Assembly (NCBI GenBank): GCA_002189035.1
Contig: NEEC01000007.1
Coordinates: 3,348,001-3,412,000 of the forward strand
Direction: 5' to 3'
Length of the DNA stretch: 64,000 nucleotides
Source: Utricularia gibba
Taxonomy: Eukaryota; Plantae; Magnoliophyta
Under the pieces are notes generated by a model that worked only from the letters and a program-made list of their open reading frames with translations, was not told where the DNA came from and did not search any database. The translations under genes and the position numbers were made by a program. Shown here in pieces: positions 31,927 through 33,706 of the stretch; positions within the stretch are counted from its first letter, which is position 1; every line of letters begins with the position of its first letter.

Positions 31927-33706
31927 CTAAAAGACCAGCTCGTGGGGCTTCACGCCGTCCTTGAGTGAGAACCTTGCACCCAGATAGTATTTGAGCTCCG
32001 GAACTGCTTCCACAGCCTTCAGAAGAGGCGTGTCAACAGCCTTCTGGTCTTCCTTCCTCTCCACGGGGAGAGATGCTTTTTCCTACGAGACAAGCCAAGA
32101 AAGGTAATCAGGGAACAGGAGCAGTAGCAGCAGGGAAAGCTGAGAGCGGACCTGCTTCTCGGCTTCGAAGAACTGATCCGCGCTCTTCGTTTTCTTTTTC
32201 TCCGCTTTCTTGGCGAAGTACTTGTCATCGAACTTCTCAAGGTTCACCCCAGAGATGTCGACCTTGGTGGATGTTCCGATGACAAAAGACTGGTTCACTC
32301 GCCTCAGGGGGACACCATTCATTTTGAAGGGCCCTGGAAGAAAGCAAGGGGGAATCAAATACAATTTTTATTTACCATTCACAACCGGATGCAACCAAAA
32401 AGCATAATTCTATGGAAATAAAAAAAGACGCATTTTTCATGGCCAAAGCATATAGGATATGAGAATACACATCCTCCCGAAACAAAGCATCAACCAGAAG
32501 CTACGTAAGATGATATGATGGATTGGTTCATGCGATGATCAAATAGAAATTTTCCAGTTTTTTGAATCCACTATATCCATCCACCAATCACCATGCAAAA
32601 GGATTAAACACCTTTACTTGAGAAGAAAAAATGTGATTTCTCATGGACAATCCCGAAAGGCAATAGCAGAAACCGGCTACACAGGATATTAGATATGGGA
32701 ACTCATCCTCCGGAAACAATGAATGATCTGTATACGATGATTGGAGACACTGGGCCATACGATGGTCACATAGCAATCGCCCCATTTTGTCAATCATCCA
32801 TTAGGTACATACATACACAAATCATCAAACAACATTAGAGGTGCGCATTTCTAATCAGAAAAAAATGTCTTTCTCATGGCCAAACCCAAGAGGTAACAGC
32901 AGAAACCCGCTACACAAGGATATAGGATATGAGAACCCATCCTCCGGAAACATGAAACACTCATAAAATGAATGAATCAATCATTCTACAGAGGAGGTTT
33001 GTATAAGATGATTCAAGACATTGGGTCATGCGATGGGCATAAAAAACCGCCCCATTTAGTGAATCATCTATAGAAACGGCAATCAAAACAATTATGGATT
33101 TACTAACAAAACATGTTCATTGTTTTTAATCATGACAAATTCCAAACGGCAGTCGAGCAAGCTGCTTCGGCGAGGCGATGATTAAACGTGTGAACACGGA
33201 AGAAATTCAACCCCAAGGGATCAAAGAACTAAATGAATGATGAAAAGATAAATGAACGGAGAATAAATTTACCAACCGGTGACGAGAAGCAATCCGGAAG
33301 GAAGCTGCTTCAGGAAAACAACACGCTTCCCCATAAACCTGCCTGCTAATAGAATCAACACCGTCCCAGGAGTGATACTCGCCCTGTACAAGATCCAGTC
33401 ATAAGAACTAAAACATCAACGCCAAATCGTTGCTGCAGAGGACAAAGCAGCGAACTCGAACCTCAGCTTGGTAGGCTTCGGCTTGCGAGTATTCGACAAT
33501 GGCTTTTTCACATCATCGGCGGGATAAAACTTTACGGCCTTTTCAGGAGCGGGAGCGGCGGCGGGAGCCTTCTCGTGGTGAGGGAATACGCCGCCATTCT
33601 TCTTCTTGATTGCCCAGAGTCCCCGTTTATGGTAGACTTTAGACCGAGAAAACTTTCTCAGTCCACGAATGAGCTCTGGATTTCGCGGCCTCTGCTTCGC
33701 CGCCAT
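31927..33706 (-). CDS. RPL6: 60S ribosomal protein L6 (eL6); 4 exons; long intron 2 hosts tandem H/ACA-like RNAs
   Basis: Exons read [39 protein letters not shown]...KPKPTKLR | [35 protein letters not shown] | [28 protein letters not shown]... | ...[19 protein letters not shown] (TAG 31927-31929). Confidence 0.98.
32425..32585 (-). pseudogene. Third, truncated copy of the snR30/U17-like RNA
   Basis: Retains GGAGGAUG...UUCUCAUAUCCUAUAU and GGCCAUGAAAAA, but the apical stem between m1 and m2 is deleted and the ACA position reads GCG. Confidence 0.6.
32629..32800 (-). ncRNA. Second tandem copy of the snR30/U17-like H/ACA RNA (diverged)
   Basis: Paralogous to 32863-33070. The 5' stem GAUGAUUG/CAAUCAUC shows a compensatory C:G to G:C change. 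Candidate H box AGAUCA; internal hairpin shortened; m1 AUAUCUAAU; m2 GUCCAU; 8 nt to ACA (32634-32632). Confidence 0.6.
32863..33070 (-). ncRNA. Intronic box H/ACA snoRNA, candidate snR30/U17 (SNORA73) homologue, intact copy (~208 nt)
   Basis: 5' hairpin closed by AGAUGAUUCA/UGAAUCAUCU (10 bp). H box AUACAA at 33004-32999. Internal hairpin closed by CCUCC/GGAGG. 3' hairpin UUCUCAU-[m1 AUAUCCUAU]...[m2 GGCCAU]-GAGAA. ACA at 32868-32866 is exactly 7 nt after m2 and is followed by UUU. It is sense-oriented in the RPL6 intron. Confidence 0.8.

What the first reader, a model, noticed from the sequence alone, without database searches (positions are those of the whole stretch)
32863..33070. Candidate plant snR30/U17 processing snoRNA hidden in an RPL6 intron, with m1/m2 covarying with plant 18S ES6
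Seen in sequence (minus strand, sense to RPL6): a ~208-nt unit with a 10-bp-closed 5' hairpin, H box AUACAA, an internal hairpin and a 3' hairpin UUCUCAU-AUCCUAU...UUUGGCC-AUGAGAA-AG-ACA-UUU. Established: snR30/U17 is an essential, non-modifying H/ACA RNA needed for 18S processing. Its 3' hairpin carries m1 (AUAUUCCUA) and m2 (AAACCAU) at the base, with m2 fixed 7 nt before ACA, and m1/m2 pair with rm1/rm2 in 18S expansion segment 6; human U17 is about 207 nt. Here the m2-to-ACA spacing is exactly 7 nt (GAGAAAG). Inference, using the angiosperm 18S ES6 as I recall it (...AGCAUGGGAUAAC...GUUGGCCUUCG...): m1 UAUCCUAU pairs 8 bp (one G-U) with AUGGGAUA, and m2 GGCCA pairs with UGGCC. The yeast pairs are UAUUCC/GGAAUA and AAACCA/UGGUUU, so both motifs appear to have changed in step with the plant rRNA. 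To my knowledge a plant snR30/U17 orthologue is not well established, so this could fill a gap in plant ribosome biogenesis.
Basis: partly seen in the sequence, partly recalled or inferred. Interest (0 to 1): 0.95.

Follow-up and report, generated by a model that had tools for sequence, protein, structure and literature searches.

The report
Candidate plant snR30/U17 processing snoRNA
An intron of a plant ribosomal-protein gene (RPL6) carries a conserved small nucleolar RNA that looks like the plant version, not yet reported, of snR30/U17, the helper RNA that yeast and animals need to make 18S ribosomal RNA; this rests on computation only.

Summary
On the minus strand at 33070-32863 there is a 208-nt box H/ACA unit: a 10-bp-closed 5' hairpin, H box AUACAA, an internal hairpin, a 3' hairpin and ACA. 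It lies in the 943-nt second intron of RPL6/eL6. It is the intact first copy of three tandem copies; copies 2 and 3 are decayed.

No Rfam family matches it. The two basal strands of its 3' pocket (AUAUCCUAU and UUGGCCAU, with CCAU 7 nt before ACA) pair with AUGGGAUA and UGGCC. These are the land-plant equivalents of yeast rm1 and rm2 in 18S ES6, and the order is the snR30 one. I read these 18S sequences from plant rDNA contigs. The host's own 18S was not available.

A second plant (L094) has the same 3' hairpin in the same intron. It is 86% identical, against about 70% for the exons, and its 5' half is unalignable. This matches the snR30/U17 pattern of a conserved 3' hairpin and a variable 5' domain. 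No canonical pseudouridylation target beyond chance was found in rRNA.

Weak points:
- Only two species plus metatranscriptome relatives carry it.
- L094's m2 pairs only 4 bp.
- m1 has a second possible site.
- No size, protein or functional data exist.

The scan had already noted the same kind of unit in another RPL6 copy of this genome (s1-181092). My estimate that it is an snR30/U17 orthologue is about 0.6.

The parts
32863..33070 (-). Copy 1: intact 208-nt H/ACA unit (5' hairpin, H box, internal hairpin, 3' hairpin, ACA+3)
   Evidence: Sequence. Fold -64.6 kcal/mol, z -3.1. Covariance model R1 scores 105.8 bits on the 3' hairpin.
33006..33069 (-). 5' hairpin with a 10-bp closing stem. Its internal loops lie about 30 nt from the H box, too far for a canonical pseudouridylation pocket.
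   Evidence: Fold. Copy 2 keeps the stem through a compensatory C-G to G-C change (alignment A1).
32999..33004 (-). H box AUACAA (ANANNA)
   Evidence: Sequence. In the main metatranscriptome variant only the N positions differ (33003 U>C and 33001 C>U give ACAUAA).
32937..32997 (-). Internal hairpin between the H box and the 3' hairpin
   Evidence: Fold. Most differences in relatives fall here. Its 5' arm is deleted in copies 2 and 3.
32871..32935 (-). 3' hairpin: lower stem UUCUCAU/AUGAGAA, pocket, middle stem AUCC/GGGU, apical stem GUA-GCGG/CUGC-UAC
   Evidence: Fold. Alignment A2 with L094 and copy 2 is 86% identical, with 92.6% of cells paired against 37-52% for slid controls.
32922..32930 (-). 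m1-like motif AUAUCCUAU on the basal 5' strand of the pocket (consensus m1 AUAUUCCUA minus one U)
   Evidence: UAUCCUAU pairs 8 bp (one G-U) with plant 18S AUGGGAUA, -8.8 kcal/mol. Identical in L094 and copy 3.
32876..32883 (-). m2-like motif UUGGCCAU on the basal 3' strand of the pocket. CCAU is shared with consensus AAACCAU and ends 7 nt before ACA.
   Evidence: GGCCA pairs 5 bp with plant 18S UGGCC, -9.5 kcal/mol. L094 has UUUGCCAU (4 bp, -6.1).
32866..32868 (-). ACA box; the predicted mature 3' end is 3 nt later, at 32863
   Evidence: Sequence. Similarity of relatives' RNA contigs stops at 32861-32870.
32629..32799 (-). Copy 2: decayed paralogue. The 5' arm of the internal hairpin is deleted, m1 is AUAUCUAAU, m2 is UUGUCCAU, a lower-stem pair is mismatched, and CCAU-ACA spacing is 8.
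   Evidence: Alignment A1. Fold no better than shuffles, z +1.6. R1 92 bits. Weak duplexes -3.7/-4.3.
32426..32590 (-). Copy 3: relic. The upper part of the 3' hairpin is deleted and ACA is replaced by GCG.
   Evidence: Alignment A1. R1 30 bits with 36 model positions missing.
32333..33275 (-). Host intron (RPL6 intron 2, 943 nt, against 78 and 69 nt for the neighbouring introns)
   Evidence: Spliced joints 32332/33276, 33382/33461 and 32081/32151 in RNA contigs.
33276..33382 (-). RPL6 exon 2
   Evidence: Joints; ORF translation.
32151..32332 (-). RPL6 exon 3
   Evidence: Joints; Pfam Ribosomal_L6e 4.4e-20.

Best explanation
Copy 1 (33070-32863, minus strand) is an intron-encoded box H/ACA snoRNA, released from the RPL6 pre-mRNA. 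It is the plant counterpart of snR30/U17.

Shown:
- The H/ACA anatomy with an internal hairpin.
- Its position in a spliced RPL6 intron.
- Strong conservation of the 3' hairpin in a second species.
- Complementarity of the two basal pocket strands to land-plant 18S ES6 at the positions homologous to yeast rm1 and rm2.

Inferred:
- The RNA assembles with the H/ACA core proteins.
- It docks on nascent pre-18S rRNA through m1 (UAUCCUAU with AUGGGAUA) and m2 (GGCCA with UGGCC), clamping the ES6 hairpin that lies between them.
- It acts as a non-modifying chaperone needed for the early cleavages that give 18S rRNA.

Relative to the yeast/animal consensus, m1 has U>C opposite the plant rRNA A>G. m2 has AA>GG opposite the plant rRNA UU>CC. 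Copies 2 and 3 are decaying duplicates.
For: 1. Architecture. Hairpin, AUACAA, internal hairpin, hairpin, ACA; 208 nt; z -3.1. This is the layout the review PMC7601244 describes for snR30/U17: a 5' domain without a usable pocket, an internal hairpin, and a 3' hairpin with an internal loop.

2. Motifs. [quoted passage not shown] CCAU lies 7 nt before ACA in copy 1 and in L094. The 7-nt rule is stated in PMC2664660.

3. Target. 120 rDNA contigs were fetched without constraining ES6. All land-plant types read AUGGGAUAAC...UUGGCCUUCGGG, while green-algal types read GGAAUA plus UGGUUU or UGGUCU.
- In a whole plant pre-rRNA, the best bipartite hit in snR30 order is 8 bp + 5 bp, 28 nt apart, at 18S about 798-840. 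The yeast gap is also 28 nt.
- Random arms pair this well at these two sites with p about 1.5e-5.
- Duplex energies of -8.8 and -9.5 kcal/mol exceed the genetically validated yeast pairs, computed the same way at -6.4 and -5.2. The consensus m2 would give only -2.7 on plant rRNA.

4. Selection. The L094 3' hairpin is 86% identical, against about 70% for RPL6 exons. The rest of the intron and the 5' domain are unalignable.

5. RNA. Metatranscriptome contigs 80-95% alike cover only 32861-33041, at word depth 100-500.

6. Not something else. No Rfam family matches. The best canonical guide target in 18S/5.8S/25S scores 9.5, against a null of 9.15 +/- 0.5.

7. Gap in the literature. [quoted passage not shown] There is no plant entry in PMC7601244 Table 1.
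Against: - The Rfam SNORA73/snR30 models give no hit, even at E<=10 on 231 nt.
- I found the unit in only two species, plus close relatives seen in two metatranscriptomes.
- It is absent from the RPL6 loci of Pistacia atlantica and about a dozen other plant contigs.
- A metagenome pattern scan gave only chance hits. An essential RNA should be universal, and I could not test that.
- L094's m2 (UUUGCCAU) pairs only 4 bp, and its H box is imperfect (AUAUAG).
- m1 can also pair 7 bp with AUAGGAU, 6 nt downstream of rm1 (-7.5 kcal/mol).
- At loose thresholds, bipartite hits somewhere in a pre-rRNA are common by chance (mean 3.5).
- Three sequences give no significant covariation.
- The pocket is short (7 + 6 nt), so basal and distal sides cannot be told apart.
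- The host's own 18S was not seen.
- RNA contigs include spacer sequence, so a processed 208-nt RNA is not demonstrated.
Confidence: 0.6

Rival explanations
1. It is an ordinary, lineage-restricted H/ACA snoRNA or scaRNA. Its 3' pocket guides pseudouridylation of an RNA I did not test (snRNA, mRNA or another ncRNA), or it is an orphan. The ES6 complementarity is then coincidence.
For: - The pocket geometry fits a guide: its top lies 15-16 nt from ACA.
- Short bipartite matches are frequent by chance.
- m2 pairing is only 4 bp in L094.
- The unit was found in few species and is missing from other plants' RPL6 introns.
- Plants have several orphan H/ACA snoRNAs (PMC5122169).
Against: - No canonical target in 18S/5.8S/25S beats the shuffled-arm null.
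- The order of the complementary rRNA segments is the snR30 order, the reverse of a guide's.
- The match falls exactly on the sites homologous to rm1 and rm2, p about 1.5e-5.
- The 5' hairpin has no usable pocket.
- No Rfam guide family matches.
Confidence: 0.28
2. It is a conserved intronic structure that acts in cis on RPL6 expression (splicing or decay control). It is not a trans-acting snoRNP.
For: - It sits in the same intron of the same gene in two species.
- One RNA contig uses a cryptic donor at 32611, which keeps copies 1 and 2 and removes copy 3.
- Intronic plant motifs of this sort have been proposed to act in cis (PMC12218528).
Against: - The H and ACA boxes, with variation confined to the N positions of the H box, point to an H/ACA RNP.
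- The tandem duplication and decay pattern is typical of snoRNA genes.
- Relatives' RNA contigs cover the unit far more deeply than flanking intron sequence is covered in the host.
- Most RPL6 genes examined lack it.
Confidence: 0.07
3. It is a dead relic or a chance hairpin with no function.
For: Two of the three copies in the window are clearly decaying.
Against: - The 3' hairpin is more conserved than the coding exons between two species.
- Copy 1 folds far better than shuffles.
- RNA contigs from relatives cover it deeply.
Confidence: 0.05

Closest known systems
snR30 (S. cerevisiae) / U17 = SNORA73 (vertebrates): the non-modifying H/ACA snoRNA required for 18S rRNA processing
   Same: - H/ACA layout with an extra internal hairpin, and about 207 nt like human U17.
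- The 5' domain is variable and lacks a usable pocket, while the 3' hairpin is conserved.
- Two motifs sit on opposite basal strands of the 3' pocket, with CCAU 7 nt before ACA.
- They are complementary to two ES6 segments about 28 nt apart, in the order m1-rm1 (5') and m2-rm2 (3').
   Different: - m1 is AUAUCCUAU, not AUAUUCCUA; m2 is UUGGCCAU or UUUGCCAU, not AAACCAU.
- The Rfam models do not detect it.
- It is hosted in an RPL6 intron as tandem copies.
- Function and protein partners are untested.
Trypanosoma brucei snR30 (as described in PMC2664660)
   Same: It is a precedent for an snR30 whose m1 differs from the consensus and is matched by compensatory changes in the cognate 18S rm1.
   Different: In T. 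brucei m2 is invariant and only m1 changed. Here both motifs differ, and both rRNA sites differ from the yeast and animal ones.
MPCRibo-HACA motif (PMC12218528, 2025): a putative H/ACA snoRNA in unusually long introns of phosphate-carrier and 40S/60S ribosomal-protein genes in 49 angiosperms
   Same: It is an angiosperm H/ACA candidate of unknown target, found in ribosomal-protein introns that are much longer than their neighbours.
   Different: The paper places the 60S examples in the last intron, whereas this unit is in the second of three. Its alignment is not in the held supplements, so I could not test whether the two are the same. No link to snR30 is made there.
Canonical plant pseudouridylation-guide H/ACA snoRNAs (the Rfam snoR74-snoR160 series, including orphan snoR145)
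   Same: Box H/ACA, intronic or clustered genes, and tandem duplication.
   Different: - No family matches. The best is snoR145 at 13.5 bits, E 7, which is noise.
- The unit has three hairpins.
- No canonical rRNA target was found.

Membership tests
snR30/U17 (SNORA73) | Box H/ACA layout: hairpin, H box ANANNA, hairpin, ACA 3 nt from the 3' end | tested here: met
   AUACAA at 33004-32999 and ACA at 32868-32866, with both hairpins predicted. The mature ends are not mapped.
snR30/U17 (SNORA73) | Internal hairpin between the H box and the 3' hairpin; 5' domain without a correctly spaced pocket | tested here: met
   Internal hairpin at 32997-32937. The 5' hairpin loops lie about 30 nt from the H box. 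L094 also has an internal hairpin. These are structure predictions only.
snR30/U17 (SNORA73) | Conserved m1 (AUAUUCCUA) and m2 (AAACCAU) on opposite basal strands of the 3' hairpin loop | tested here: inconclusive
   The position and strands fit. The sequences differ: AUAUCCUAU (one U missing) and UUGGCCAU or UUUGCCAU (only CCAU kept).
snR30/U17 (SNORA73) | m1/m2 element 7 nt upstream of ACA | tested here: met
   CCAU-GAGAAAG-ACA in copy 1 and CCAU-GAGAAAU-ACA in L094. The decayed copy 2 has 8 nt.
snR30/U17 (SNORA73) | m1 and m2 base-pair with rm1 and rm2 of the cognate 18S ES6 | tested here: met
   8 bp + 5 bp on land-plant 18S at the homologous sites, p about 1.5e-5, -8.8/-9.5 kcal/mol. Caveats: the host's own 18S was not available, L094's m2 pairs 4 bp, and m1 has an alternative site.
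snR30/U17 (SNORA73) | Recognised by the curated Rfam covariance models | tested here: not met
   No SNORA73/snR30 hit at the gathering score, nor at E<=10 on 231 or 251 nt.
snR30/U17 (SNORA73) | 3' hairpin conserved while the 5' domain diverges | tested here: met
   86% identity over 74 nt against about 70% for the exons; the 5' domain is unalignable between the window and L094.
snR30/U17 (SNORA73) | Present throughout the lineage (an essential gene) | tested here: inconclusive
   Seen in the window's organism (at least two loci), in L094 and in metatranscriptome relatives. Not found in about 13 other RPL6 loci or in a strict metagenome pattern scan. Whole plant genomes could not be searched.
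snR30/U17 (SNORA73) | Binds the H/ACA core proteins; required for early pre-rRNA cleavages and 18S accumulation; guides no pseudouridine | not testable with these tools
   These need experiments.
Canonical pseudouridylation-guide H/ACA snoRNA | Pocket whose top lies 14-16 nt from the H or ACA box | tested here: met
   For the 3' hairpin the top of the pocket is 15-16 nt from ACA. The 5' hairpin does not meet this.
Canonical pseudouridylation-guide H/ACA snoRNA | Bipartite complementarity flanking a target U in rRNA or snRNA, in guide orientation | tested here: not met
   The best score in plant 18S/5.8S/25S is 9.5, against a shuffled-arm null of 9.15 +/- 0.5. There are zero hits in guide order at the thresholds that find ES6. 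snRNAs were not tested with tools.

The most novel reading that the evidence does not exclude
This is the plant orthologue of snR30/U17, so far unreported. Both of its rRNA-docking motifs have co-evolved with land-plant-specific changes in 18S ES6 (rm1 GGAAUA>GGGAUA, rm2 UGGUUU>UGGCCU). It would be the second natural compensatory case after trypanosomes, and the first in which both motifs changed.
Probability: 0.55. Interest if true: 0.75.

Novelty: new member of a known kind. Interest (0 to 1): 0.68.

Why it matters
snR30/U17 is one of the few essential snoRNAs that process rRNA rather than modify it. Plant reviews state that no plant homologue has been identified (PMC8351944), and the 2020 snR30 review lists none (PMC7601244). 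This candidate has defined docking motifs and a defined 18S target. That would make the early steps of plant 40S assembly testable by mutation and compensation, as was done in yeast. It would also add natural covariation in support of the m1/rm1 and m2/rm2 model. Finally, it would explain why homology searches failed: the invariant motifs used as search handles are changed in land plants.

Tried and rejected
- **Rfam.** I searched the whole window at the gathering score, 3 kb at E<=10, and the unit and the L094 unit alone. Only noise came back, with snoR145 at 13.5 bits as the best.
- **Viral-contig pattern scans**. The hits were chance matches and none held 18S.
- **Metagenome scan** with CATATCCYAT..TGGCCATG..ACA. 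It returned 37 loci and none has the lower stem. The recurrent ones lie in a PPR-type reading frame, judged by eye from the translation. In hindsight the pattern was too strict, because L094 reads TTGCCATG.
- **RPL6 exon-3 ORF search followed by all 12 contig look-ups**. Only L094 carries the unit. Pistacia atlantica, contigs from several soil and plant-associated metagenomes, and the other contigs do not (BLAST, regex and model R1).
- **Supplement searches of three plant snoRNA papers** for the motif strings. Nothing was found. Only 200 of the 621 files of PMC5122169 are searchable.
- **Atzorn et al. 2004** is not held, so no full U17/snR30 sequence was available for alignment.
- **Extra complementarity of the 5' domain and internal hairpin to pre-rRNA**. 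The longest run is 13 bp, inside the null distribution. UUCCGGAGG pairs with CCUUCGGGA next to rm2, but this is not conserved in L094, so I dropped it.
- **Covariation on three 3' hairpins**. It is not significant: there is one double change (A-U to U-A in the middle stem) and the rest is invariant.
- **RNA evidence in the host**. The intron is covered at about 8x, against 150-300x for the exons, in libraries of unknown type. That does not demonstrate a stable small RNA.
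Full report
**What is there.**
On the minus strand, 33070-32863 reads as a box H/ACA RNA of 208 nt. Its parts are:
- a 5' hairpin closed by a 10-bp stem (AGAUGAUUCA/UGAAUCAUCU);
- one U, then the H box AUACAA (33004-32999);
- an internal hairpin (32997-32937);
- a 3' hairpin (32935-32871) with a 7-bp lower stem, UUCUCAU/AUGAGAA;
- AG, then ACA (32868-32866), then UUU.

The minimum-energy fold reproduces these three hairpins at -64.6 kcal/mol. The z-score is -3.1, and none of 200 dinucleotide shuffles folds as well. The host is RPL6/eL6 (Pfam Ribosomal_L6e_N and Ribosomal_L6e). RNA contigs of the same organism join 32332 to 33276, so the unit lies in a 943-nt intron. The neighbouring introns are 78 and 69 nt.

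**Three tandem copies.**
The intron holds three related units (alignment A1).
- Copy 1 is intact.
- Copy 2 (32799-32629) has lost the 5' arm of the internal hairpin. It has a mismatch in the lower stem, changed motifs (AUAUCUAAU and UUGUCCAU) and 8 nt instead of 7 before ACA. It folds no better than shuffles.
- Copy 3 (32590-32426) has lost the top of the 3' hairpin and has GCG where ACA should be.

A C-G to G-C exchange between copies 1 and 2 keeps the 5' closing stem paired. RNA contigs of the same organism also show a further paralogue of the 3' hairpin with different flanks. That fits the earlier scan note s1-181092, which describes a pair of such units in another RPL6 copy of this genome.

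**Not a known family.**
Rfam 15 gives nothing at gathering scores for the window. It gives nothing for the unit at E<=10, whether I search 3 kb or only 231 nt. The same holds for the homologue in L094. So the unit matches no curated pseudouridylation-guide family. It is also not recognised by the SNORA73/snR30 models.

**The target side.**
I fetched 18S from public data with a probe 150 nt downstream of ES6, so the ES6 sequence was left unconstrained. The probe hit 120 contaminant rDNA contigs in prokaryotic assemblies.
- All land-plant types read ...UUAGCAUGGGAUAAC...AUAGGAUUNCGNUCCUAUUNNGUUGGCCUUCGGGAUCGG...
- The few green-algal types read GGAAUA, with UGGUUU or UGGUCU.

PMC2664660 defines yeast rm1 as GGAAU(A) at G802-A806 and rm2 as U836-U841, both in ES6.

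**The pairing.**
- m1: UAUCCUAU pairs with AUGGGAUA over 8 bp, one of them G-U.
- m2: GGCCA pairs with UGGCC over 5 bp.
- The two sites are 28 nt apart, the same gap as in yeast, and in the snR30 order: the 5' strand pairs with the 5' site.

Relative to the consensus motifs (AUAUUCCUA and AAACCAU; PMC7601244 Table 1), one m1 position is U>C opposite the rRNA A>G. Two m2 positions are A>G opposite the rRNA U>C. RNAduplex gives -8.8 and -9.5 kcal/mol. The yeast pairs, which have been validated genetically, give -6.4 and -5.2 when computed the same way. The consensus m2 would give only -2.7 on plant rRNA.

**How much is chance.**
At loose thresholds (at least 6 bp plus at least 5 bp anywhere in a 7-kb pre-rRNA), shuffled rRNA or shuffled arms give about 3 hits. 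Complementarity alone therefore proves little. Restricted to the two sites homologous to rm1 and rm2, random arms reach the loose threshold with p = 4e-4. They reach the observed quality with p = 1.5e-5. With a few hundred H/ACA hairpins per plant genome, an accidental match of this quality is unlikely, though not impossible.

**Conservation.**
I searched the exon-3 ORF against the protein collection and fetched contigs for 12 hits. One of them, L094 (a Logan assembly), carries a homologue in the same intron.
- Its 3' hairpin is L094:3634-3707.
- That hairpin is 86% identical to copy 1, while the RPL6 exon blocks align at about 70% and the rest of the intron does not align at all.
- CAUAUCCUAU, the lower stem, CCAU, the 7-nt spacing and ACA are all kept.
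- The apical G-U becomes A-U, and a middle-stem A-U becomes U-A.
- The 5' half is unalignable but still predicts a 5' hairpin and an internal hairpin.

A conserved 3' hairpin with a free 5' domain is what the review describes for snR30/U17.

**RNA evidence.**
Two metatranscriptomes hold contigs 80-95% alike that cover only 32861-33041, at word depth 100-500.
- One contig ends where the 5' hairpin begins. Others run through an 87-nt stretch into a neighbouring unit, so the units are tandem there too.
- In the main variant the H box differs only at its N positions, giving ACAUAA.
- m1 shows no listed difference.
- One contig (X13 record 12) shows no listed difference across 32861-32892, which covers m2, the 3' strand of the lower stem and ACA.
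- Differences near contig ends are not listed, so other variants cannot be judged.

This shows the RNA is present in relatives. It does not show a processed RNA of defined size.

**The rival guide reading.**
If the middle stem AUCC/GGGU forms, the pocket (AUCCUAU and UUGGCC) has guide-like geometry. A canonical target would then read GGCCAA-UN-AUAGGAU. A scan of plant 18S, 5.8S and 25S gives a best score of 9.5, against a shuffled-arm null of 9.15 +/- 0.5. There are no hits in guide order at the thresholds that find ES6. snRNAs were not tested with tools. The 5' hairpin has no pocket at the right distance.

**Weak points.**
- L094's m2 is UUUGCCAU, which pairs 4 bp at -6.1 kcal/mol. That is still no weaker than yeast m2. 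Its H box is AUAUAG.
- m1 can also pair perfectly over 7 bp with AUAGGAU, 6 nt downstream of rm1. This is the 5' strand of the ES6 hairpin that lies between the two sites. I favour the rm1-homologous site because it preserves the yeast geometry.
- The unit is absent from the RPL6 loci of Pistacia atlantica and about a dozen other plant contigs, so the host gene is not conserved widely.
- My single metagenome scan used a pattern that even L094 would fail, so presence across plants is untested.
- A 2025 survey reports an unassigned angiosperm H/ACA motif in long ribosomal-protein introns, called MPCRibo-HACA (PMC12218528). I could not test whether it is the same RNA.

**Verdict.**
The main rival is an orphan or guide H/ACA snoRNA (about 0.28). 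Within the searchable literature no plant snR30/U17 is reported. The scan itself had already flagged the same kind of unit on another piece of this genome.

Noticed in passing
window 33077-33145 (-): Just upstream of copy 1 in the same intron there is a weak match to the plant C/D snoRNA family snoR41 (23.7 bits, E 0.52, gathering score 40). The C box is degenerate (UCAUGA) and there is no clear D box. It may be a relic of a C/D snoRNA, or chance.
   Followed up: no
window 32332/32611 (-): One RNA contig (run X10, depth 13) joins 32611 to 32332 with GT..AG ends. It keeps the intron part that holds copies 1 and 2 and removes only the part that holds copy 3. This points to a cryptic donor, or stepwise removal of the intron.
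   Followed up: no
window 32720-32834: An RNA contig of another sample of the same species (X5) replaces 113 nt between copies 1 and 2 with 79 other letters. It also has an extra A at 32682. This looks like an allelic or paralogous variant of the array.
   Followed up: no
window 34507-35013 (-): About 800 nt upstream of the RPL6 start there is a retrotransposon integrase fragment (Pfam Integrase_H2C2 4.5e-13, with a weak Tf2-1-type SH3 match below its curated cutoff).
   Followed up: partly
L107-L226 (genome contigs): More than 120 species-representative bacterial and archaeal assemblies hold contigs with plant or green-algal 18S rDNA. Examples are Collinsella MAGs, Modestobacter, Streptomyces, Flavobacterium and the leaf-nodule Burkholderia. 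This is eukaryotic contamination in prokaryotic genome records.
   Followed up: partly
window 32941-32949 (-), against plant 18S about 841-849: The conserved 3' arm of the internal hairpin (UUCCGGAGG, kept in all three copies) is complementary over 9 bp, including 2 G-U, to CCUUCGGGA directly next to rm2. This is within chance expectation and is not conserved in L094.
   Followed up: partly
L094:3495-3560: The 5' hairpin of the L094 unit contains UUCUCAUAUAACCC, which resembles the lower stem plus m1 of the 3' hairpin (UUCUCAUAUCCUAU). The 5' hairpin there may have arisen by internal duplication.
   Followed up: no
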